Assembly (NCBI GenBank): GCA_025594325.1
Contig: JANHCV010000006.1
Span: forward strand, 372,001-436,000
Length of the DNA stretch: 64,000 nt
Direction: 5' to 3'
Origin: Blastocladiella emersonii ATCC 22665
Lineage: Eukaryota; Fungi; Blastocladiomycota
Shown: piece by piece, positions 4,377-18,347 of the stretch
How the letters are laid out: each line of letters starts with the position of its first letter
Numbering within the stretch: the first letter of the stretch is position 1
Position numbers and translations under genes: made by a program
The notes under the pieces: generated by a model
What the model saw: the letters and a program-made list of their open reading frames with translations, nothing else
Database searches by the model: none
What the model was told of the DNA's origin: nothing

Positions 4377-6479
4377 CTACGCTTTTGCTTGGCGGATCAG
4401 CGAGAAGAGCTGCCGGTAGCGTGGCACGTAGTCCAGCCCCTCGCACGAGTAGAAGCGAAGAAAATCACCGATCCCGGCGGTCGCCACCCGCGGCTCGAGC
4501 GCCTGCAGCACGGCCTTGGACGAGTTGAGGGGGGTGATCGTTGAGATCTCGTAGTGCAGGGTCTCGAGAAGCTGGAGCAGCCACTCGCCCCTCGAGTCCA
4601 TGACCTCCTTGTGCGACGGCACGCGTACTCGAAGGTGATTCATGCAGGCAGCGATGCGCGTGGCGAGCTCGCGCGGCGGCAACAGGATCGGGCACGTCGC
4701 GGCGAGGTGCACCTGCGGCTGGTTGGGCCCGCCGTGGTTGGGGTTGGCGTCGGCGAGTGCCGGGCAGAAATTGCACATGTCGCCGTCTGCTGGTGGCGCG
4801 GCGGGGCCTCGGTGGGAGATGGGAAAGCCCCACTTCGGGATGTGCGGCACTGGCGGGTCGCGGCTCACGGGCTGACGGGCGCGGTGCGGCGAGGACGGCG
4901 AGCGCGACGACGAGGCCGCCGCCACCATTGCGAACGTGATGCTCGATGTACGACGACTTGACGACGAGCGTGACGGGGAGCGTGACCGAGCTGCCGCGGT
5001 GCCCAATGTACGACGACTTGACGAGCGCGACGGGGAGCGTGACCGAGCCGCCGCGGTCGGCGACGACGATGACGCCGCGGCGGCGGCGGCGGCGGGAGAC
5101 GCAGGGCCGCGGGAAGCACGGCCACCACGCTTAGCGCTTGGGCGTACGGGGAGGGCCAGGGCCGGAGTAGGGGCCCGAACGGGCGTAGTGGGGGCGGGCG
5201 GCTCGGTGCTTGAGGAACCCGACGGCGGCCGCAACAGCTGGTGCGCCTGGTCGAGCAGGTACTTGAGGTTGGCGACCTGAATGAACGAGGTCATGGGCAG
5301 CCGCGCGAGGGCCTGCAGCGCGACGTGGACCGAAACGTAGTCCGTGTTCTTGGCCGACAGCTCCTCGATGTGCACCGCGACCCGATCCACGTACTCGACG
5401 AGCGGGGTGCGCTCCTTGTGGAACACGGCCTTGGTGATCTGGGTCCCAGCCGCAGTCGCATTCTCGGGGCCGAGGGGACCGCCGAAATGGACGAGGTCAA
5501 CGGCATCGACCCCGCGAAGCTGCTCCAGCCCGCGCGCGACCTGCTCGGCGAGGTAGCCGATCCCGTCCTTTGTGGTGATCAGCAGACACTTGTCCGTCGC
5601 GTGCGGTTCCGCGAAAAACCGCTCCGGGCCACGCGAGCCGACGGTGCAGGCGGTGCAGCGGAGGACGGCGGCGGCTGTGGTGGTGGTACCCTCGGCGGCG
5701 TTGATGGCCGCGGGCTCGGCGTGGTGCGCGATGTGCTGCGTCGAGTGGGCCGAGCCGGCTGCCGGGGAGGAAGGGCGCGGGACGGGATCCGCCGCCGCGG
5801 CCGTCGCCGCCGACAGGGCCGATGGCGGCGCAGGGAGCGCGCTTGCCGAGCCGCTGTTGCTGGTCGGACCGTCGCCCAGCGTGCCCGACACGGGCGGCGC
5901 CGCGGCCGACACGCAGGCCGAGCTGTCGTCGTGGGCGCCCTTGTCCGAGTCCGAGTCCGAGTCCGAGTCTGTCGGGAACATGGGTCGTTTCAGCTTGTTG
6001 GCGGCCGGGCTGCGCGGCGGCGGTGCGGGCCCAAACCCGTGCGCAAACTCGAACCCGACCGCGCCGATGAGCGGCATGGGCGCCGAGTGGCTGCGCGAGC
6101 GCGGCCGGGCATCCTGCAACCCGGCCCCGGCGATGAGGGCGGGCGCGTGCGCTGCGCCGTCCGGGGCTGGGGCCGGGGCCGGGGCCGCGGCGGGCAACGG
6201 CGACGGCGATGGCAAGGGCGGTGGCGACGACTCGTACGCCCAGAGCTCGCGCGAGATCCGGCCGTCCATGTCCTCGAGGCGACGCACTTCGTCGGTCACC
6301 GCCATCAGCCGCTCGAACGCGTCCTTGTTGCACAGGTAGCAGCCGAACTGGACCAGCTGCCAGCCGCGGCGCGTGGTCGGCTTCAGGAGGCCGTCCGAGA
6401 ACGCGCGGAACGCGGCAACGGCCTGGCCAGCGTCAAACTGCGGGGGCGGCGCGGGGGCGCCGATCTCGGCGCGATGCAT
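4377..6479 (-). CDS. Hypothetical 700-aa protein with two extended CCHC zinc-knuckle-like motifs and Pro/Ser/Ala-rich linkers
   Basis: Single ATG-initiated ORF with C/G-ending codon bias. Motifs CTAC-x14-H-x4-C (5586-5657) and CNFC-x18-H-x4-C (4692-4775). Confidence 0.65.
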   Translation of the reverse strand: MHRAEIGAPAPPPQFDAGQAVAAFRAFSDGLLKPTTRRGWQLVQFGCYLCNKDAFERLMAVTDEVRRLEDMDGRISRELWAYESSPPPLPSPSPLPAAAPAPAPAPDGAAHAPALIAGAGLQDARPRSRSHSAPMPLIGAVGFEFAHGFGPAPPPRSPAANKLKRPMFPTDSDSDSDSDKGAHDDSSACVSAAAPPVSGTLGDGPTSNSGSASALPAPPSALSAATAAAADPVPRPSSPAAGSAHSTQHIAHHAEPAAINAAEGTTTTAAAVLRCTACTVGSRGPERFFAEPHATDKCLLITTKDGIGYLAEQVARGLEQLRGVDAVDLVHFGGPLGPENATAAGTQITKAVFHKERTPLVEYVDRVAVHIEELSAKNTDYVSVHVALQALARLPMTSFIQVANLKYLLDQAHQLLRPPSGSSSTEPPAPTTPVRAPTPALALPVRPSAKRGGRASRGPASPAAAAAAASSSSPTAAARSRSPSRSSSRRTLGTAAARSRSPSRSSSSRRTSSITFAMVAAASSSRSPSSPHRARQPVSRDPPVPHIPKWGFPISHRGPAAPPADGDMCNFCPALADANPNHGGPNQPQVHLAATCPILLPPRELATRIAACMNHLRVRVPSHKEVMDSRGEWLLQLLETLHYEISTITPLNSSKAVLQALEPRVATAGIGDFLRFYSCEGLDYVPRYRQLFSLIRQAKA
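4946..5057. repeat. Two-copy ~60-bp intragenic tandem duplication
   Basis: ATGTACGACGACTTGACG... starts at 4946 and 5006; encodes TAAARSRSPSRSSSRRT-like units on the minus strand. Confidence 0.85.
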
Positions 6480-7053: not shown

Positions 7054-8719
7054 TCAGAGCCACGGCGTCCAGCCCTCGAACATGCGCGCGAGCCGGCCCT
7101 CGTCCATGGCCTCGTCAATGAGACGCGAAACCTACATGTTCGCGCCATCGAGTCAGTCGTCGTCGCCCGCATGCACGCGTCGAATCGAAGCGTACCCGAT
7201 CGGCGACACTGGACCCAGCACCCGGACCCTCGTCCGCGGACCCGTCGAGCTTGGCGTACAGGCTGCGCAGGACGCGCACCCCGCGGTCGTGCGGCGCGTC
7301 TGCTGCGGCCGCCGCAATCGGCTTGACGGCGACGCCCGACGGTGTCGGCTGCGTGAGCCGGTCCATGTCGCCGTCCTCGTCCCCGCCCTCCTCGGTACCA
7401 ACCATGGGCGGGTCCTCGCCGTTGACCCCGTCACCGTCGCCCCCGCCGGGCGCCGCCGCACCGGACCCGGCGCCCTTGAGCATCTCCCAGTCGATGCTCG
7501 GGTCGAGGACGAGCGACTTGAGCAGCCGCGCAAAGAGCCCGCGGTACTTGGCGAGCAACCCCAAAACCACCTCGGCCGCCTGCGCAAACGGGCCGCGCAC
7601 GCCGAGCGCCGCGCCGCCCATGGCCTCGACAAAGCTGCGCGTGAGCCGGAACGGGACCACCTCGGGCACGTACAGCGCAAGCCCGCGGTCGAAACAGATG
7701 TTGTAGTCAATGTGCACCACGTGCCCCGTGGCCGGGTCGACCAGCACGTTGTCGAGGTGCCGGTCCCCCAACCCCAAGACGTACCCGACGACCGCCATGG
7801 CCGCCGACGAGTGCGCGAACCGGCGCGCGGCTGCGAGGATGCCCGCCGCGGAGGTCGCTTCCAGAAAAAGCGCGTTGCGCAGCCAGTCGGCGGGCGACCC
7901 GGCCACGAGCCGCGCGTGCACCTCGCGGAGCTGTTCCGCCGAACACGCGCGGCGGACCGACCGCTGCGTCGGCGGTTGTTGGGTAACAGGCCGACCGAGG
8001 ACCGGGTGCGCGGCCGCGTTGAAGGCGACAACGGGCTTTGGCGGGTGCTCGCCGCCGTGCGTCGCCATGTACGCGCGCTTGTACAGCGTGTAGGCCGGGA
8101 CCGCGTCGACCCACTGGATGAACCCGCCGGACCGGCCGAGCGGGACCACGGCGTAGCTACGCGCGAGCCCGCCGCTCCCAACAGCCGCGAGCGCGGCGAC
8201 GCGCGGGTCGCTCCCCCGTGCAGCCGTACCCGCCACGACGGCGTTGGCCGCGTCGAGGAACTGCATCATGGCCTGGTCGAGGTGCAGGTCCTCGAGCCCC
8301 TTGAGCAGGTACGCCGAGTCTTTCCCCGCGGCACCCGTGAACGTGAGCTTCTTGGGTTTCGTCTTGGTCGGCAGCACCGTGAACGCGGCGTGGACGCCCG
8401 CGATGCGCTCGCTGGTGCCCGGCAGGAACGTGGCCGACAGATCGAGGTCGTGCAGCACCTCGACCTCGTGCAGCCGCAGCGTGCGCGCGCGGTTGATGGC
8501 GGACCCGAGCGCCGCCAGCAGCGGGTGCAGCGGCGCCCACAGCTTGCGGACCGCGCGCCGCCACACGGCTGGGTCCTTCTCGGCGTCGGCGTTGGTGTGC
8601 GGCGACCATGCCGCGAACGCGGCCTCGGCCTGCTCGAGCGCCGCGTCAATCTTGGGCCCGAACGCGTCGCGGAACCGGACCTCGCAACACCCGAGATAGT
8701 CGGCGCGGCCGCTGTTGCA
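7054..8719 (-). pseudogene. SMG1: SMG1-type PIKK kinase, C-terminal part only (kinase plus FATC); 5'-truncated gene or mini-kinase
   Basis: SMG1-type motifs VLPTKTKPKKL and YLLKGLEDLHLD; catalytic YVLGLGDRHLDN and HIDYNICF; VPEVVPFRLT. Intron 7132-7195 (GTACGC..TAG) joins to FATC VSRLIDEAMDEGRLARMFEGWTPWL* (exon 7054-7131). The frame is closed upstream by TGA at 8720-8722 with no ATG before the kinase domain. Family is secure; pseudogene status is uncertain. Confidence 0.75.
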
Positions 8720-9021
8720 TCAAGTTCGAAGCGTTACATGAGAGAATATGAGCGAGAATCGATGATGACGGTGAATGACGTCGCGTCGCGTTTCGAATTC
8801 GGCGCTGCATGAGCCGAAGCTTCGGCGGACCCGACGCCACGGACCCGTCAGCGAATCCGGGCCGCTGGTCAACCTCGTGGGTCCGCTCCGCTGGCTCGGG
8901 CCCGAGCATGGCCGATCGGAGCGTCCCCAACTCGCGGACCAGCTTTAGGGCGTGACGAGCACGCACTCCGGCGGCCGGCGAGTCGGGTCCGTCCCCGTTG
9001 CCATGGGGGCTCGGCCCAGGG

Positions 9022-9249: not shown

Positions 9250-10684
9250 ATGACCGCCTCCATCAAGCTCCTGTCGCTGCTGCTCCTGGCGCTCGTCGCG
9301 ACGTCGGCCAACGCGCAGTCCCCGCTTGAGGACTGCGTCAAGACGTTTGACGCCAACAAGGACTGCTTCACGGCCAAGTCGACCAACGACGCGGCCAAGT
9401 TCTTCAAGGTCGACTACAAGAACTACTACAAGGTGGTCTCGGTGACGCCCGCGTTCGGCGCTCCCTCGAGCTACGCCCTGGTGATCCGCGGCGCCCCCAA
9501 GGACGCGCTGCCGACCAACGTCAACGCCACCTTCGAGATCCCCGTCAAGTCGGTCGGCGCCTTCGACACCACCTCGGTCCCCTACCTCGAGCTCCTCGGC
9601 AAGCGTGCCGCGATTGCTGCCGCCAGCAACCCCGAGTACGTCTCGTCGGCCTGTACGTGTTCTCGCTTCGCCTTCCGCCCTTCCACTTCGGGACCTCTCG
9701 CTCACCGCAACGTTCTCCCAAACAGGCTTCCAGAAGCTCGTTGCCGCTGGCACCATCAAGAAGGTCGACGAGAAGAACCAGGCGAGCGCGACCTCGACGG
9801 TGGCGCCGCTCGATGCCATCTTCTCGGGCATCGGCGCGACGCCGGGCCTCGCTGACGGCAAGTGGGTGACGCAGTCGGCGTCGAGCGACCCGGGCGCCTT
9901 CAACCGCGCCGAGTGGCTCGAGTACTTTGCCCAGTGGTTCGGTCTCGAGGGCGACGCCCAGAAGACCACCACCGAGATCCTGGCCCGCTACACGGCCGCC
10001 AAGGAGGCCGCCAAGAAGGCCGCCGTCGCGTCGCCCCTCAAGGTCGCCTGGGTCTCGTACTCGGCGCCCGCATCGTTCAACGGCAACAAGGCGTCGTGGT
10101 CCATCTCGGCCGCCGCCTACAAGAAGGACCTCGTCACCGACGCCGGCGCGACCATGGTGACCCCCTCGGTGTCCACCTTCTCGGATGTCGCCGAGTTCCG
10201 CAAGCAGCTGACCGAGGTCGACGTGGTCATCAACGAGTCGTTCAAGTTCAACGAGACGCTGTCGGGCTTCGCGCAGGCGTTCGGCGTCGACGACAACTTC
10301 AAGTTCATGAAGAACAAGCAGGTGTACGGCCTCGACAAGCGCGTCAACCCGTCGTTCCTGCTCGACTGGTTCGAGTCGGCGCTCGTGTTCCCGAACGTGG
10401 TCCTGCTCGACCTCATGTCGATCGTCAACCCCAACGCCGTCAAGGGCGTGACCCGCACCTACCTCCGCAACCTCGACTCGGACAAGATCACCGTCGTCAC
10501 CGCCGACCAGTGCCAGGGCGACGTCGCCGCCCCGCTCTCGGTCCAGGGCCCCGCCGTCCAGCAGATCTCGTCGGGCAACGTCGGCTCGGGCGACGGCGCC
10601 GCGCGCACCTCGGCCGCTCCCGCCACCGTGGCTGCTGCTCCCCTCGCCGTCGCTGCCGCGGCTGCTGCCTTCTTCCTCGCCTAA
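9250..10684 (+). CDS. CBA1: Secreted, probably GPI-anchored substrate-binding-fold protein, CBA1 (cobalamin acquisition protein)-like, paralog 1, 453 aa
   Basis: Exons 9250-9652 and 9726-10684 (intron GTACGT..GCTCAC..AACAG). Signal peptide MTASIKLLSLLLLALVATSANA. Motifs VDYKNYYKVV, VPYLELLG..NPEYVSSACF and RAEWLEYFAQWFGLEGDA resemble my recollection of algal CBA1 and of BtuF/TroA-class binding proteins. Hydrophobic C-terminal tail. Confidence 0.75.
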
Positions 10685-11144
10685 GCGAGCCTGAGTCCCT
10701 CCCCTATCCGTGTGTGTGGTGTACTGCTAGTCTAGATCAATGTACCAACCTGTTTATGTGTTTTCTTCTGTCTGCTACGCCGAGGACGCCGGAAAAAGTC
10801 GGAGGCGGAGCGGGGAGACATCACGCGCCCGCCCACGTGCGCTGCGAGACAAAACGCGTCGACGCGTCGCCGCGCGATCGCGGCCGGCCGAGCGCCTGGC
10901 CGAGCGCCAGGAACGCTCTCCCTTGTCCCGCACCAGCATCCATGAAACAAGCACGCGCAACCGACACCGACGCGGCGGAAACGCGCGCGGACGCGCCGCG
11001 CCCACGCCCCGCCCGCATGCGCCGCCCCGCCTCCGCGCTCTCAAAACCCGGTGCCCACCCATGCCCCTCCCCTCTCTCGCGCACCTGCTGCTGCACCGAG
11101 ACGACGGATACACATAGACGAACCGCACCGCATCCGACACCACC

Positions 11145-12637
11145 ATGGCGCGCACTAGCCTCGCCTCGATCCTCACCGTCCTGGCCCTCGCGGTCCTCGC
11201 GTCCACGACGCTCGTCGCGGCGCAGAGCCCGCTCGAGGAATGCGTCAAGACGTTCGATGCCAACAAGGACTGCTTCACGGCCAAGAGCACCAGTACGTTG
11301 TCTCGCCGTGCGGTCCACCGCGCTCTCGCGCTCACGTCGACTCGCGCGCGCGTGTAGACGAGGCGGCCAAGTACTTCAAGGTCGACTACAAGAACTACTA
11401 CAAGGTGGTCACGGTGAACAACACGTTTGCGCCCATCACCAACTACACGCTGGTGATCCGCGGCGCGCCCAAGACCAACCTCCCGACCAACGTGAACGGC
11501 ACGTTCGAGATCCCCGTGCGCAACGCGACCGTGTTCGACACGACGTCGGTGCCGTACCTCGAGCTGCTCGGCAAGCGCGGGCAGATCCAGTCGGCGGCGT
11601 CGCCTAGCTACGTGACGTCGGCGTGCTTCCAGAAGCTGATCTCGGCGGGGACCATCAAGACGGTCGACGACAAGAACGTGACCAACGCCAACACCACGCT
11701 GGCCACGGCCGACGTGATCTTCTCGGGCGTCGGCCAGACGCTCAACGTGTCGACGGGCAAGTGGGTCACGCAGGCCGCCTCGAGCGACCCGGGCGCCCTC
11801 AACCGCGTCGAGTGGCTCGAGTATTTCGCGCAGTGGTTCGGGCTCGAGGGCGATGCGCAGAAGATCACGACCGAGATCACGGCGCGGTACAACGCGGCCA
11901 AGGCGGCCGCCGCCCGCGCGAAACCCGCGTCCCCGCTCAAGGTCGCGTGGGTCTCGTACTCGGCGCCCGCGTCGTGGAACGGGAACCAGGCGTCGTGGTC
12001 GTTCTCGGCCGCCGCGTACAAGAAGGACCTTGTCACGGACGCCGGCGCCACGTTCGTCACGCCGGCCGTCTCGACGTACACGGACGTGGCCGAGTTCCGC
12101 AAGCAGCTCACCGACGTCGACGTGGCCATCTACGAGTCGTTCTCCAACGACACGCTCGCCACCTTCACGTCCGCGTTCGGCCTCAACTCCGACTTCAAGA
12201 TGGTCAAGAACGCCCAGGTCTACGGCCTCGACAAGCGCGTCAACGGGCTCGGGTTCATGGGTACGCTCGCTCCTCACCTCGCCCCCACTTTCGCAGAAAC
12301 GCTAACACATTTCGATCTCGTAGACTGGTTCGAGTCGGCCCTCGTCTTCCCAAACGTGGTCCTCGTGGACCTCATGACCATCGTGTCGCCGCGCGCCGTG
12401 CCCGCCGGCGTCACGCGCCGGTACCTACGCAAGCTCGACTCGGAGTCCCAGGGCGTCGTGGCCACGGGCGAGTGCTCGGGCGACGCCTCGGCCGCGCAGT
12501 CGGTCCAGGGCCCCGAGTCGGCCAGCTTCTCGTCGCTCCCCACGTCCGCGGCCACGCGCCGCGGCGGCGCCGAGTCGAGCGCGGTCACGGCGGCCGTCGC
12601 GGTCGTCGTCGGGATCGCGGTGAGCATGATCCTGTAA
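11145..12637 (+). CDS. CBA1: CBA1-like secreted, probably GPI-anchored substrate-binding-fold protein, paralog 2, 454 aa
   Basis: Exons 11145-11292, 11358-12260 and 12324-12637 (GTACGT..TAG; GTACGC..GCTAAC..TAG). Collinear and highly similar to paralog 1 (for example WLEYFAQWFGLEGDAQK is identical). Signal peptide and hydrophobic tail AVTAAVAVVVGIAVSMIL*. Confidence 0.75.
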
Positions 12638-12988: not shown

Positions 12989-14586
12989 CTAGCGCCGCTT
13001 GTCGATGTTGGGCAGCTTCCGCACCGGCGCGAGCCCAGTGTCGTACGAGTCATTGTCGTAAGTGACGATCTCGGTGAGCGTCGGCCAAACCTGTGCTGGG
13101 TCAGAGTCAATCGAGCCGCGGATGGTAAGCTTACGCAGCACTGGGAGCTTAGTGAGGTGCAGGAACCCGTAGACCGAGCTGTCTGCATCAAGCTCGCGTA
13201 GATTGGAAAGAGTGAGAGAGGCGCGCAACGGGTCTGTTGCAACGATTGAGTGCATGGCCAACGGTAAAGCGAGCCGCTCGAGCTTAGGGAGCTTGCGCGC
13301 CGCAAGGATAAGGGCGCTCAGATCACAGCTTAGCGTACTCGTACAGTCGGTCGAGTTGGGTTGGACAATGAACTCGCGAAGGTTGCGCTCCGTGGACCAC
13401 GGAGAGAGCAATCAAGCAGCGTGATTGAGAGCTCAAAGTAGCGCAGACTCGGCATATGTACGGTGAAGGGCGGCCCATCAGTTACAAGCAAGGGCGACGT
13501 GCAAGTCACCCTGAGTTCGTCGCCGGTTGCAAGCAGCGTGAGCCGCTCGAGGTGTGGATGCGTGAGGATCTCGCCAAAGTACCAAAAGTGGCCGTCGGTG
13601 CCGGACAAGGTCAAGGAGCGGACTCGGCGAAACCGCTCTGTCCCGCGGAATCCGAATTCGCGATTGTCAGGCGCATCTTCGTCCACAGGATCGCCGATGA
13701 GAGTGGCGAACCAAGCTTGCTGTAGCTGCTTAACTTCCTCGCTGGGCAGTCGCAGGGCATCAATGGCGGGTGTAAGCTTCTAGTCGAACTCGAGTGCCTC
13801 GTAATCGATGTCTCGCACGCCCAAAGGCAGAACGGCGCTGAGGGAGGAAGAAAAGTGCACAACGCGGCACGCGACCGCATTGGGGAACTTGCGCGAGAGC
13901 AGGGTTAAACATTCCGACGCGTCAACGGCGTTGGAGGCAAATACAAGCGTTCGGACAGCTTGAACATTGAGCCGTTTCAAAAACGGAACGTCATCAAGTC
14001 GATAGCGGCCAATGAATTGTGAGTGGTAGACCCCGCCTGAGAACGGGTTTAGCAGCGTTACACTCGTTACCAGGCTCAGCGGGACGGGGACCAAGACGAG
14101 CCCGTTGTGGATAAGGCATTGGATCTCTCCGAGTGCAGTCGCGTCGAGAAACCTCGACCAAAGCGAGTGTACCGAAAGCTGGACGCGCTCCGCCGTGTCA
14201 ACGGCACGGGCATACGATGCAAAGTACAAATTGCCGCCAGCAATAACAAACGGATACAGTTCGTCATAGCGGGAGTGGCTGCGGATCTGCGCGGGTTTGA
14301 AGGAATGGTAGGTGCGAGGTCGAAGACTGATGAATGGGACGGCAGCTCCGACTATGCCGCCGCACTCAGTCGGAAGCGAGCGGTCCGCTGTGATCGGCAA
14401 AATGAGCTCGCGGAAGAGGATCGGGCGGGTAACGATGTAGGCGGTGCTGCAGACCTGGCCGATGTAGAAAAGGTCCCAGCGCCAATAATCGTTCGGATCG
14501 CTGCAGCGGCGACCGCCGTCCAGGACGTGGTCAACGATGAGCTGCCACAACTCGAGAGGGAGGTCGGGGGCAGGCGACTGGATCAT
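12989..14586 (-). pseudogene. F-box/LRR-like family, disrupted paralog (copy A)
   Basis: N-terminal PDLPLELWQLIVDHVL is collinear with the intact copy at 24336-26198. In-frame TAG at 13780-13782; frameshift or deletion near 13420; C-terminal LERLALP/LRELDADSS/LRKLTIRG match the intact copy. Confidence 0.8.
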
Positions 14587-15617: not shown

Positions 15618-16154
15618 CCGTAGTTCGTGCAGCAGCACGGACGCGTGGTCTCCACGCGCGATTCATCCCGCTCTGAATCCGCGGTCACGTCGGTGCCCGC
15701 TCCTGGACGGCGCCGTACGGTCCTACCGTAGTTCGCGCAGCAGCGCGGACGCGTGGTCCCCATGCGCGACTCATTCCGCTCTGAGTCCGCGGCCACGTCG
15801 GTGCCCGCTCCTGGGCGGCGCCGTACGGTCCTGCCGTAGTTCGCGCAGCAGCGCGGACGCGTGGTCTCCATGCGCGACTCGTTCCGCTCCAAGTCCGCGG
15901 CCACGTCGGTGCCCGCTTCCGAGCGGCGCCGTGCGGTCCTGCCGTAGTTCGTGCAGCAGCACGGACGCGTGGTCTCCATGCGCGACTCGTTCCGCTCCGA
16001 GTCCGCGGCCACGTCGGTGCCCGCTCCTGGGCGGCGCCGTGCGGTCCTGCCGTAGTTCGTGCAGCAGCGCTGACGCGTGGTCCCCATGCGCGACTCGTTC
16101 CGCTCCGAGTCCGCGGCCACGTCGGTGCCCGCTCCTGGGCGGCGCCGTGCGGAT
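15618..16154 (+). repeat. 108-bp tandem array x5 in the retrotransposon 5' leader
   Basis: CCGTAGTTCG.. recurs at 15618, 15726, 15834, 15942 and 16050. Confidence 0.93.
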
Positions 16155-16403
16155 CCGGGATGTGTGTGTGTGCCTGGTGTACTTTGGGTCGAAGGAAAAG
16201 GTGGTCGCGATGCGGGGGAGCGGGCGTCGTGCGTGCAGCGAGTCCCTCGGGTGGCGCAACGCGCTCCGGGCCGCCGCCGCCGCAGCTCGCTCACTCACTC
16301 AATCCCCGTCGCCCCCGCCGATCCGACTCCTAGTCTTCACTACCTGCAACACCATCCTCCTCTGCCACTGAGCCGCGTGTCCGCACGACCGGTGGTCTTC
16401 GCC

Positions 16404-18347
16404 ATGTACGGCTCCCGACAACGTAGGGACGCACGGCATGGCCCACTCACACTCTCTCCTATCCTCTCTCGCAGGATCACACATCGCATCCTCGTGCTCT
16501 TTGAGCAGCTCACGGGCATCGCCGACAACGAGTACCTGGCCATCTTCCGCCATGAAGATATTCTCGCTGCCGCCGCGCGCGAGACCAGTACCCCCGTCAA
16601 CCAGATCACCGAGGAGCAGTTCAACGAGGCCCGCACGACCGCTATCACGGACCTCATCGACGAGGTCTCCCGCGACTACGTCATCCTGCGCCACAACTCG
16701 ACCGTCTCCATCTCATCGCGCGACAACATCGAGACGGTGCTCGAGTTCCTCACGCCGCACTGGACCCCTGCCGCCGACACGACGACCGTCGACGCGTACC
16801 TCGCGCACGGCCTCGTCCCGTGCGGCGCCTCGCTCATCATGAACGTCAACCCGACGATCCCGTCGGCCATCGTCAAGCCCGAGCTGCTCATGGCCGTGAC
16901 CGTCTTCCTCGCTGCTCAGCAACCCGATGCCGGTGCTCCTCGCGCCGCACAGCCTGACGCACAGCAACTCACCGAGAAGATTTCCCGTCTCGAGTCCGTC
17001 GCCCAGACGACCGAGAAGACCATCGCCGACCTGCGCGACCAGCTCGCCTCGGCCAACACGTCCATCACCACGGCCAACACGGCCGCCGAGCAGGCCCGCC
17101 ACCGCGCGCAGACCTCGGCCGACGCACTCGCCGTCGCCGACGGTAAGCTCAAGGCGGCCGAGCTCGAGACCACCAACCTCAAGTCCAAGGTGGGTCACCT
17201 CGAGGAGACCATCGTCTCGACGGTCGCCCGCGCTGCCGCGGCGGCCGCCGCCTTCTCGTCTACCTCGCCGGCACCCGTCGTCACGACCGGCATCGATTGG
17301 CGCTACTCCCTGCCCACCGAGCAATCGGACGCCTTCGACTCGATTACGTGGCGCCTGACCAACGGCTGGATCGACTTCCCCGCCGACGAGATCAAGCACC
17401 GTCTACTCTGCAGAAAGCAACTCTGCATCATCAAGAAGGACCCGACCACGCTCAACACGGTCACCTTCGCCGGTAACAACGCCGGTATCATCCTTTTCTC
17501 GAACCTCGACACCATGATCCGCGACAAGCTGCTGTCGCTCATGGGCCACCACTCGTCGAGCGCCGCCTACACGCACTTCCCCCACGCGTGCGACGTGTGG
17601 GCGCACATGATGGACCAGTACCAGAACCTCGACGTACTCGTCGAGCGCCGCGACCGCGCCATGAAGAAGCTCAAGGACCTCCGCCCCGGCGCCTTCCCGT
17701 CCGCCGCGACGTTCGCCTCCGCGTTCCGCGCTGAGATCTCGCTCGTCGACGCGTGCATTCCCGGCACCCACCTGCGCATCGACGAGATCATCTCGCTGTT
17801 CCGAGCCAAGTTCGACGGCCAGAGCGAGACGGTCGCGTCGCACATCTCGCGCGCCTGCAGCAAGACGCCCACCATCGAGGCGCTGTGCGAGAAGCTGCAG
17901 GACGAGTTTGGCGACCACTCGTGGGTCCCGCGGACCTCGTCGGGCGCCGGTAAGCGCAAGCACCACGACGAGTCCAACACGCCGTCGGCATCCTTGTCGT
18001 CGTCCTCTTCCTCTTCATCATCGTCCTCCCGCACCGACCGCGGCTCCAACCACCACGACCACGTCCACGGCAACCCGAAACGCCCGCGCACCGGCGACGG
18101 CCTCCTGCGCAAGTGCAAGTGGTGCATCTACAAGGACAAGAAGAAGGTCACCGGCCACAACGAGATCCGCTGCCCGATCCGGCCGTGGGGTGAGTTCAGC
18201 CCGAACCACGACCCGCGCTACGAGGGCTACGAGTCGGGCCCACCGCCGCGCGGCTTCGAGCCGAGCCAGCGCCAGGGCGAGTGGCACGTGCACAAGTACG
18301 CGCCCGCCAACCGCACAACGTCGGGAAACGGCCGTGGGGAGCAGTAG
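16404..18347 (+). CDS. gag: Copia Gag-like protein (coiled coil, UBN2-like region, extended CCHC knuckle)
   Basis: Open frame from ATG 16404 to TAG 18347; knuckle CKWC-x10-H-x4-C. Possible in-frame 69-nt intron at 16406-16474. Confidence 0.8.
   Translation: MYGSRQRRDARHGPLTLSPILSRRITHRILVLFEQLTGIADNEYLAIFRHEDILAAAARETSTPVNQITEEQFNEARTTAITDLIDEVSRDYVILRHNSTVSISSRDNIETVLEFLTPHWTPAADTTTVDAYLAHGLVPCGASLIMNVNPTIPSAIVKPELLMAVTVFLAAQQPDAGAPRAAQPDAQQLTEKISRLESVAQTTEKTIADLRDQLASANTSITTANTAAEQARHRAQTSADALAVADGKLKAAELETTNLKSKVGHLEETIVSTVARAAAAAAAFSSTSPAPVVTTGIDWRYSLPTEQSDAFDSITWRLTNGWIDFPADEIKHRLLCRKQLCIIKKDPTTLNTVTFAGNNAGIILFSNLDTMIRDKLLSLMGHHSSSAAYTHFPHACDVWAHMMDQYQNLDVLVERRDRAMKKLKDLRPGAFPSAATFASAFRAEISLVDACIPGTHLRIDEIISLFRAKFDGQSETVASHISRACSKTPTIEALCEKLQDEFGDHSWVPRTSSGAGKRKHHDESNTPSASLSSSSSSSSSSSRTDRGSNHHDHVHGNPKRPRTGDGLLRKCKWCIYKDKKKVTGHNEIRCPIRPWGEFSPNHDPRYEGYESGPPPRGFEPSQRQGEWHVHKYAPANRTTSGNGRGEQ

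What the first reader, a model, noticed from the sequence alone, without database searches (positions are those of the whole stretch)
9250..12637. Tandem pair of CBA1-like, probably GPI-anchored binding proteins: candidate fungal vitamin B12 capture system
Seen: two collinear ~454-aa proteins with signal peptides, conserved Cys and C-terminal small-residue plus hydrophobic tails. Established: CBA1 is needed for B12 uptake in diatoms and Chlamydomonas and has a periplasmic-binding-protein-like fold; early-diverging fungi retain B12-dependent enzymes, but how they take up B12 is poorly described. Inference: these are surface-tethered B12 (or metal/siderophore) receptors, possibly specialised after duplication. 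Paralog 2 carries many more N-x-S/T sequons (NNT, NYT, NGT, NAT, NVT, NTT, NVS, NDT) than paralog 1. The CBA1 match comes from remembered motifs, not a search.
Basis: partly seen in the sequence, partly recalled or inferred. Interest (0 to 1): 0.8.

Follow-up and report, generated by a model that had tools for sequence, protein, structure and literature searches.

The report
Tandem CBA1-like B12-uptake genes, fungus
The water fungus Blastocladiella emersonii carries two side-by-side copies of a gene from the CBA1 family, which algae need to take up vitamin B12; relatives in early-diverging fungi were already reported, so this is a sound but incremental find.

Summary
Window 9250-12637 (+) contains two intact, spliced genes of Blastocladiella emersonii ATCC 22665, of 453 and 454 aa. 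My splice models equal the NCBI models H9P43_005441 and H9P43_005442 exactly. The proteins are 66% identical. Each has an N-terminal signal peptide, four conserved Cys and a charge-free hydrophobic C-terminal end after a small-residue stretch. They carry 3 and 8 N-x-S/T sequons.

The CBA1 reading is supported. Their Allomyces ortholog (54-58% identical) is the sequence Sayer et al. 2023 list as the Allomyces CBA1 hit. A profile built from the fungal proteins also recovers that paper's Heterostelium hit and a Mesostigma sequence. I count 13 of the 16 published conserved residues as kept, including the putative pocket cluster W/W-F-E. The AlphaFold model (pLDDT 91.5) has a class III solute-binding-protein fold (Z up to 18.9). 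Its best structural matches bind siderophores or heme, and BtuF is not among them, so the fold does not name the ligand.

The duplication is specific to the Blastocladiella lineage. GPI anchoring fits the sequence anatomy, but I could test it only heuristically. B12 binding, the direct comparison with algal CBA1, and MetH or MCM in this genome were not tested here.

Verdict: a new member of a known family, of modest interest.

The parts
9250..9652 (+). Gene 1 (H9P43_005441, 453 aa), exon 1. It encodes the signal peptide and the start of the N-lobe.
   Evidence: The spliced translation equals P0002. The exon ends in phase 1 inside the Cys135 codon.
9653..9725 (+). Gene 1 intron, 73 nt, GTACGT..CAG.
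   Evidence: The position matches intron 2 of the Catenaria ortholog.
9726..10684 (+). Gene 1, exon 2, up to and including the TAA stop.
   Evidence: Weak Pfam PF01497 match (13 bits).
9250..9315 (+). Gene 1 predicted signal peptide (residues 1-22, ..TSANA|QSPLE).
   Evidence: Hydrophobic N-terminus, maximum Kyte-Doolittle 2.74 over 12 residues. The cleavage site is inferred from the -3/-1 rule.
10595..10681 (+). Gene 1 GPI-signal-like C-terminus (residues 425-453). Small residues GAA/SAA are followed by an Ala/Val/Leu/Phe tail that runs to the last residue.
   Evidence: the last 25 residues are uncharged, and candidate omega sites lie 23-30 residues from the end. Heuristic only.
11145..11292 (+). 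Gene 2 (H9P43_005442, 454 aa), exon 1.
   Evidence: The spliced translation equals P0001.
11293..11357 (+). Gene 2 intron 1, 65 nt, GT..AG.
   Evidence: The position matches intron 1 of the Catenaria ortholog.
11358..12260 (+). Gene 2, exon 2, which holds most of the binding-protein domain.
   Evidence: Pfam PF01497 E 1.7e-4, 21.5 bits, below the cut-off of 27.5.
12261..12323 (+). Gene 2 intron 2, 63 nt, GT..AG. It lies just before the DWFES motif.
   Evidence: It is absent from gene 1, Catenaria and Allomyces.
12324..12637 (+). Gene 2, exon 3, up to and including the TAA stop.
11145..11219 (+). Gene 2 predicted signal peptide (residues 1-25, ..TLVAA|QSPLE).
   Evidence: maximum Kyte-Doolittle 2.67. 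The cleavage site is inferred.
12563..12634 (+). Gene 2 GPI-signal-like C-terminus (residues 431-454). RR-GGA-ESS is followed by a Val/Ala/Ile tail that runs to the last residue.
   Evidence: the last 20 residues are uncharged, Kyte-Doolittle 2.78 over the last 15, and there is an omega candidate at G431. Heuristic only.

Best explanation
These are two tandem paralogs of the eukaryotic CBA1 (cobalamin acquisition protein 1) family. They arose by a duplication within the Blastocladiella lineage.

Shown here: each encodes a secreted-pathway protein with a class III (FhuD/BtuF-type) solute-binding fold.

Inferred: after signal-peptide cleavage, the C-terminal hydrophobic segment either is exchanged for a GPI anchor or stays as a tail anchor. 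Either way, the binding domain sits on the outer face of the plasma or endosomal membrane.

Inferred from algal genetics: the domain captures scarce external cobalamin, or related corrinoids, in the cleft lined by the conserved W247 / W352-F353-E354 cluster. Because it has no transporter domain, it delivers its ligand by endocytosis to the lysosomal export and chaperone route (LMBD1/ABCD4, CblC/CblD). That route supplies MetH and methylmalonyl-CoA mutase.

The copy with eight sequons is probably the more heavily glycosylated one.
For: - Identity of the genes.
- Family membership: P0003 (Allomyces AMAG_15988) is 58% identical to gene 2 over exon 2 and 54% over the full length. Its sequence is the one printed as 'Fungi_EP00129_Allomyces_macrogynus' among the CBA1 HMM hits (threshold 1e-20) of Sayer et al. 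2023.
- A profile of the fungal proteins finds 3371 representatives, 504 of them at or below 1e-30. These include P0025, which is that paper's Heterostelium hit (2.2e-103); P0055, Mesostigma (3.2e-80); and a close relative of the Spizellomyces hit (P0111).
- Thirteen of the 16 residues that paper marks as conserved are present in both paralogs, including the W255 and W394/F395/E396 equivalents and D408.
- Fold: the AlphaFold2 model has pLDDT 91.5 and pTM 0.87. Foldseek E is down to 1e-9 and VIA Z is 15-19 against cluster-A binding proteins.
- PF01497 matches 14 of 87 family members, best E 9e-9.
- CBA1 knock-outs abolish cobalamin and pseudocobalamin uptake in Chlamydomonas and Phaeodactylum.
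- Blastocladiomycota are reported to have all three B12-dependent pathways. Unchecked scan notes list MetH, MetE, MTRR, MMADHC/MMAA, ABCD4-like, LMBRD1-like and cobS genes in this genome.
- All named fungal family members I saw are non-Dikarya, the fungal lineages reported to use B12.
- The duplication is lineage-specific (tree), and the Catenaria and Allomyces loci hold one copy each.
- Anchor anatomy. In the family, 62 of 90 full-length representatives end in a charge-free hydrophobic stretch.
Against: - No binding or uptake data exist for any fungal member.
- I could not obtain CrCBA1 or PtCBA1 as a usable sequence, so the link to the characterised proteins is transitive plus a by-eye residue mapping.
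- The best structural matches bind siderophores, heme or metals. BtuF is not in the top 50 of either list. Sequence searches against solved structures give only a marginal IsdE (heme) hit, E 0.0019.
- About 80% of streptophytes keep CBA1-like genes although most lack METH, so the family is not tied strictly to B12.
- Blastocladiales differ from the family at near-invariant positions: N216 to G, F214 to W, and loss of three family Cys. In B. emersonii, a 94%-conserved Asp is Y308 in gene 2 and N304 in gene 1.
- The window holds no B12-related neighbour.
- Algal CBA1 localises largely to the ER and endomembranes and is described as having a transmembrane helix, not a GPI anchor.
- MetH and MCM in this genome were not verified by me.
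Confidence: 0.6

Rival explanations
1. Same family and fold, but the ligand in Blastocladiella is not cobalamin. The proteins would be surface receptors for heme or another tetrapyrrole, or for an iron-siderophore complex, as FBP1 is in diatoms.
For: The top structural neighbours are siderophore binders (CeuE, YiuA, HtsA, FecB) and heme binders (PhuT, ShuT, HmuT, RhuT), Z 15-19. The only marginal PDB sequence hit is the heme binder IsdE. Streptophyte CBA1-like proteins persist without B12 enzymes, and Sayer et al. suggest another tetrapyrrole for them. Diatom FBP1 shows that a eukaryotic FhuD-like protein can serve siderophore uptake. Blastocladiales changed several near-invariant family residues.
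Against: The putative pocket residues that Sayer et al. place around B12 (W, W-F-E) are kept. Among fungi the family appears in the lineages that use B12. Z-scores among cluster-A binding proteins do not discriminate ligands.
Confidence: 0.22
2. They are CBA1-type B12 proteins but are not GPI-anchored surface receptors. The C-terminal segment would stay as a single-pass tail anchor, and the proteins would work mainly in the ER or endomembranes, as reported for the algal proteins.
For: CrCBA1 is predicted to have a C-terminal transmembrane helix. Tagged CrCBA1 and PtCBA1 localise to the plasma membrane and ER-like membranes. AlphaFold models residues 441-453 of gene 2 as a helix. No dedicated GPI predictor was available.
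Against: The hydrophobic stretch runs to the very last residue with no cytosolic residues. It is only about 15-18 residues long and rich in Ala. A small-residue stretch at the distance expected for an omega site precedes it. The same design recurs in 62 of 90 family representatives. C-terminal tagging in the algal studies would mask a GPI signal (my inference).
Confidence: 0.3
3. One of the two copies is a redundant, decaying duplicate with no distinct role.
For: The crude dN/dS between the copies is 0.49. Both depart from the family at a 94%-conserved Asp: Y308 in gene 2 and N304 in gene 1.
Against: Both reading frames are intact with canonical introns. All other conserved motifs are kept in both, and GC3 of 0.95-0.97 shows that both retain the strong codon bias of this genome. 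That same bias depresses dS and inflates dN/dS.
Confidence: 0.1

Closest known systems
CBA1, cobalamin acquisition protein 1 (Phaeodactylum Phatr3_J48322, Chlamydomonas Cre02.g081050; Bertrand et al. 2012, Sayer et al. 2023, PMC10828217)
   Same: Same homologous family, shown through the Allomyces, Heterostelium and Mesostigma links. About 450 aa with an N-terminal signal peptide, a solute-binding-protein fold and one C-terminal hydrophobic segment. Thirteen of 16 published conserved residues are kept, including the putative B12-pocket cluster. It occurs in an organism whose phylum has B12-dependent enzymes.
   Different: Fungal, untested functionally, and present as a lineage-specific tandem pair. 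N216 is replaced by G, F214 by W, and P251 is shifted by one residue. Three Cys typical of the family are missing, and one Cys (C43) is specific to Blastocladiales. A GPI-type C-terminus is proposed here, whereas the algal papers describe a transmembrane helix.
Allomyces macrogynus AMAG_15988 (CBA1-like hit in the EukProt survey of Sayer et al. 2023)
   Same: Ortholog, 54-58% identical and 453 aa. It has the same four Cys, the same WFGLE variant motif and the same C-terminal design.
   Different: Single copy at its locus and intronless. It keeps the family Asp that both Blastocladiella copies replaced.
BtuF / FhuD / CeuE type bacterial class III (cluster A) periplasmic binding proteins, Pfam PF01497
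   Same: Two Rossmann-like lobes joined by a long rigid helix. Z is 15-19 over about 240-280 aligned residues. There is a weak PF01497 match to the C-lobe.
   Different: Only 10-19% identity, and below the Pfam gathering score. It has extra N-terminal (about residues 26-60) and C-terminal (about 375-425) Cys-containing segments. No ABC-transporter genes were found within about 10 kb on either side, and anchoring is of the eukaryotic secretory-pathway kind.
FBP1 of Phaeodactylum (FhuD/DesE-like siderophore-binding protein, Coale et al. 2019, PMC6876252)
   Same: A eukaryotic cell-surface protein with a bacterial binding-protein fold, used for endocytic nutrient capture.
   Different: Different ligand and family. 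Homology to FBP1 was not tested here.
Mammalian folate receptor alpha (GPI-anchored vitamin receptor; from my own knowledge)
   Same: Working analogy only: a GPI-anchored, glycosylated, disulfide-bonded receptor that captures a scarce vitamin and is internalised.
   Different: Unrelated fold and sequence.

Membership tests
CBA1 (cobalamin acquisition protein 1) | Belongs to the set of sequences that the published CBA1 HMM recovers (full-length E below 1e-20, Sayer et al. 2023). | tested here: met
   Indirect. The ortholog P0003 (54-58% identical) is the printed Allomyces hit. My fungal profile recovers their Heterostelium hit P0025 at 2.2e-103 and Mesostigma P0055 at 3.2e-80.
CBA1 (cobalamin acquisition protein 1) | Direct significant similarity to the characterised CrCBA1 or PtCBA1. 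| not testable with these tools
   Neither algal protein could be obtained as a stored sequence.
CBA1 (cobalamin acquisition protein 1) | The 16 highly conserved residues of Sayer et al. Fig. 8 (K78, P118, L136, E206, F214, F215, N216, E218, P251, V253, W255, G289, W394, F395, E396, D408). | tested here: met
   Thirteen of 16 are identical in both paralogs: K65, P102, L120, E201, F210, E213, V245, W247, G279, W352, F353, E354, D366 in gene 2 numbering. The exceptions are W209 for F214, G211 for N216 and L243 for P251 (the Pro sits one residue earlier). The mapping was done by eye from the CrCBA1 sequence printed, checked against family columns.
CBA1 (cobalamin acquisition protein 1) | Periplasmic-binding-protein-like fold. 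| tested here: met
   The model has pLDDT 91.5. Z is 18.9 to 4hn9, and 15-18 to YiuA, CeuE, PhuT and HmuT.
CBA1 (cobalamin acquisition protein 1) | Signal peptide and at most one C-terminal hydrophobic segment. | tested here: met
   (hydropathy heuristics, not SignalP).
CBA1 (cobalamin acquisition protein 1) | Required for cobalamin uptake, or binds cobalamin. | not testable with these tools
   Needs experiments. No fungal data were found in the paper library.
CBA1 (cobalamin acquisition protein 1) | Co-occurs with B12-dependent enzymes (METH, MCM) in the same genome. | not tested
   Only the literature for the phylum and unchecked first-stage notes for this genome.
Pfam PF01497 Peripla_BP_2 | Score at or above the gathering cut-off (27.5 bits). 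| tested here: not met
   20.2-21.5 bits for gene 2 and 13 bits for gene 1 exon 2. Fourteen of 87 relatives match at E of 0.001 or better, so this is a divergent branch of the superfamily rather than a scoring member.
GPI-anchored proteins | N-terminal signal peptide, plus a C-terminal signal made of a small omega, omega+1 and omega+2, a short polar spacer, and a hydrophobic tail that reaches the last residue. | tested here: inconclusive
   My own heuristic finds all elements in both proteins. No validated predictor and no biochemical test was available.

The most novel reading that the evidence does not exclude
After a Blastocladiella-specific duplication the two CBA1 copies have divided the work. 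One possibility is a heavily N-glycosylated, wall- or surface-exposed form alongside a lightly glycosylated membrane form. Another is receptors tuned to different corrinoids (cobalamin versus pseudocobalamin or incomplete corrinoids) that feed a CobS-based remodelling route. Together they would be the first described GPI-anchored vitamin B12 receptors, and the missing entry step of fungal B12 metabolism.
Probability: 0.12. Interest if true: 0.65.

Novelty: new member of a known kind. Interest (0 to 1): 0.35.

Why it matters
How early-diverging fungi import the B12 that their MetH, MCM and class II RNR enzymes need is unknown. CBA1 is so far the only protein shown to be required for B12 uptake in algae. 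These two genes are concrete candidates for that step in a classic experimental fungus.

The recurring GPI-type C-terminus across the family suggests a testable membrane topology that the algal papers did not consider. However, the central idea, CBA1 homologs in B12-using fungi, is already in print. What is added here is a tandem pair, its evolutionary history, and the anchor hypothesis.

Tried and rejected
- Sequence search of gene 2 exon 2 and of the family profile against all PDB chains gave only chance-level or marginal hits.
- NCBIfam found nothing meaningful.
- Two further word-indexed homolog searches, with the fungal alignment and with the Haplosporangium protein, were meant to fetch Chlamydomonas CBA1.
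- Short CrCBA1, PtCBA1 and Arabidopsis peptides taken from the paper's supplement were not found among the 154 stored proteins.
- Neighbouring genes gave no B12 link. They are a PI3/PI4-kinase-type gene and three ORFs without Pfam domains.
- I do not use dN/dS (0.49) as evidence for relaxed or positive selection. GC3 of 0.95-0.97 limits synonymous change.
- Word searches of the paper library found nothing on CBA1 with GPI, nor on Blastocladiella with B12.
- I considered the pair being an assembly artefact. I rejected this because the copies differ at 27% of nucleotides and have different intron sets.
Full report
**What is there**

The window is from Blastocladiella emersonii ATCC 22665, assembly GCA_025594325.1, contig JANHCV010000006.1. 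It is GC-rich at 60-74%.

I read the DNA and compared the two copies with each other to set the exon boundaries.
- Gene 1 is 9250-9652 + 9726-10684.
- Gene 2 is 11145-11292 + 11358-12260 + 12324-12637.
- All three introns are short (73, 65 and 63 nt), begin GTACG and end AG.

The translations are 453 and 454 aa. They are letter-for-letter the deposited models H9P43_005441 (P0002) and H9P43_005442 (P0001). The finding's coordinates run exactly from the first ATG to the second stop.

The proteins are 65.9% identical, and the coding DNA is 72.8% identical. Both have the following features:
- a hydrophobic N-terminus ending A-N-A or V-A-A before QSPLE;
- four aligned Cys;
- a C-terminus whose last 25 (gene 1) or 20 (gene 2) residues carry no charge, preceded by Gly/Ser/Ala-rich sequence.

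Orthologs in Catenaria, Allomyces and Sorochytrium have 3, 2 and 5. Gene 2 is therefore the sequon-rich outlier within Blastocladiomycota.

**Which family**

Pfam gives only a sub-threshold match to Peripla_BP_2 (PF01497). This is 21.5 bits for gene 2 exon 2 and 20.2 for the full protein, against a cut-off of 27.5. Fourteen of 87 relatives match it at E of 0.001 or better.

The first homolog search found orthologs in Allomyces (P0003, 58% identical over exon 2), Haplosporangium, Scutellospora, Neoconidiobolus and Catenaria.

An exhaustive profile search found 3371 cluster representatives, 504 of them at E of 1e-30 or better. Every named one I looked up is eukaryotic:
- fungi: Mortierellomycotina (often two paralogs per species), Glomeromycotina, Mucoromycotina, Kickxellomycotina, Chytridiomycota and Blastocladiomycota;
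- the amoebozoan Heterostelium;
- the green lineages Mesostigma, Chlorokybus, Pedinophyceae and Prasinoderma;
- the chlorarachniophyte Amorphochlora.

No Dikarya appeared among them.

**Link to CBA1**

Sayer et al. 2023 (PMC10828217) built a CBA1 HMM from diatom, pelagophyte, brown-alga and Chlamydomonas sequences. They searched EukProt at 1e-20 and reported CBA1-like proteins in five METH-containing fungi, Allomyces macrogynus among them.

The Allomyces sequence printed in their supplement matches P0003 over the roughly 400 residues shown there. Their Heterostelium sequence starts like P0025. Their Spizellomyces sequence shares an 18-residue motif with P0111.

I mapped that paper's 16 highly conserved CrCBA1 residues onto the printed CrCBA1 sequence and onto my family alignment. 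Thirteen are identical in both Blastocladiella proteins. These include the cluster the authors place around B12 (W255, W394, F395, E396, which are W247, W352, F353, E354 in gene 2) and D408 (D366).

Three differ: F214 is W, N216 is G, and P251 sits one residue earlier. Allomyces shares all three differences.

I could not obtain CrCBA1 or PtCBA1 as a stored sequence, so no direct score against a characterised CBA1 was computed. That part of the argument is transitive.

**Fold**

I predicted gene 2's protein with AlphaFold2 on an 87-sequence alignment. The result was pLDDT 91.5 and pTM 0.87. Only the signal peptide and residues about 425-440 were of low confidence.

Foldseek (E down to 1e-9) and VIA-align (Z 18.9 to 4hn9; 15-18 to YiuA, CeuE, PhuT, ShuT, HmuT, RhuT, HtsA and BauB) place it firmly among class III / cluster-A solute-binding proteins.

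The nearest solved structures bind siderophores, heme or metal chelates. BtuF is not in the top 50 of either list. With 10-19% identity and closely bunched Z-scores, I read this as showing the fold but not the ligand.

**Evolution of the pair**

A maximum-likelihood tree of 15 family members was built, with the Catenaria protein re-spliced by me to 446 aa. The two Blastocladiella copies are sisters (support 94/91). Catenaria joins next (100/99), then Allomyces, then Sorochytrium.

tblastn finds one copy in the Catenaria locus and one in the Allomyces locus, each with 8 kb of flank on either side. It finds two copies in this 64-kb window. The duplication is therefore specific to the Blastocladiella lineage.

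Intron evidence fits this:
- Catenaria has introns at the positions of gene 2's first intron and of gene 1's only intron (both phase 1), so each paralog lost one ancestral intron.
- Gene 2's second intron is unique to it.
- The Allomyces gene is intronless.

A PI3/PI4-kinase-type gene lies next to the CBA1 gene in both Blastocladiella and Catenaria. Nothing B12-related is nearby.

**Anchor**

Both C-termini have the anatomy of a GPI signal. It consists of small residues at plausible omega positions 23-30 from the end, a short polar spacer, and then 15-18 hydrophobic residues up to the last residue with no cytosolic tail.

The same charge-free hydrophobic end occurs in 62 of 90 full-length single-domain family representatives. 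This comes from a home-made rule, not a validated predictor.

The algal papers speak of a C-terminal transmembrane helix and of plasma-membrane plus ER-like localisation. I found no paper that links CBA1 with GPI.

**Mechanism and confidence**

- Shown: two intact paralogs, family membership (indirectly), the fold, the secretory-pathway design, and the lineage-specific duplication.
- Inferred: cobalamin as ligand, from algal knock-outs for cobalamin and pseudocobalamin. Also from the family's presence in fungal lineages that use B12.
- Inferred: hand-over by endocytosis to LMBD1/ABCD4-type exporters, since a binding protein without a transporter domain cannot move B12 itself.
- Inferred: GPI anchoring.

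Earlier notes of this scan, which I did not check, list MetH, MetE, MTRR, MMADHC/MMAA, ABCD4-like, LMBRD1-like and cobS genes elsewhere in this genome.

My estimates are:
- about 0.9 that these are CBA1-family proteins;
- about 0.6 that they serve corrinoid capture;
- about 0.6 that the anchor is GPI.

**Points against the B12 reading**

- Streptophytes keep CBA1-like genes without B12 enzymes.
- The Blastocladiales proteins changed several near-invariant positions. They lost three family Cys ('YQCG', 'YxC' and one C-terminal) and gained their own (C43).
- In Blastocladiella a 94%-conserved Asp is Y308 in gene 2 and N304 in gene 1. It is Trp in Catenaria.

**Novelty**

The family, its fold, its role in algae and its presence in early-diverging fungi including a blastoclad are all published. 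Sayer et al. explicitly propose testing fungal CBA1 by knock-out.

New here are the Blastocladiella tandem pair and its history, the sequon asymmetry, the divergent residues, and the GPI hypothesis. This makes it a new member of a known kind, of modest interest.

Noticed in passing
L002:8280-9830 (Catenaria anguillulae MCFL01000004.1): The deposited Catenaria model BCR44DRAFT_1219893 (P0007, 318 aa) starts upstream with an unrelated extension and skips most of the binding domain. Re-splicing as 8280-8409 + 8508-8774 + 8872-stop gives a full 446-aa ortholog collinear with the Blastocladiella proteins.
   Followed up: yes
proteins P0008-P0011, P0015, P0021, P0022, P0030, P0041: Many family members are long proteins (800-1700 aa) with two or three tandem CBA1-type domains. 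Examples are Pedinophyceae sp. YPF-701 (1182 aa, 3 domains) and Amorphochlora amoebiformis (1032 aa), plus several metagenome contigs. The CBA1 papers I read did not mention multi-domain forms.
   Followed up: partly
window 7054-8909 (-) and L002:4539-7311: A short PI3/PI4-kinase plus FATC gene (555 aa as called; 900 aa in Catenaria with a faint FRB match) lies next to the CBA1 gene in both species. It is far shorter than usual PIKK kinases such as TOR or SMG1. The gene model may be incomplete, or it may be a truncated kinase.
   Followed up: partly
window 9250-12637; alignment A2 columns: Blastocladiales CBA1-like proteins lack three Cys that 74-88% of the family has ('YQCG', 'YxC' and one about 15 residues after C401). 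They carry their own Cys in 'DCF', where the family has 'DYF'. This suggests a rewired disulfide pattern. I could not measure distances in the model.
   Followed up: no
window 4377-6479 (-), 13780-14586 (-), 16077-18347 (+): Three long ORFs flank the pair. At least two overlap called genes, and none has a Pfam match at E of 0.001 or better.
   Followed up: no
window 9250-12637: GC3 is 0.95-0.97 in both genes. Codon bias this strong makes dN/dS estimates between paralogs in this genome unreliable.
   Followed up: partly
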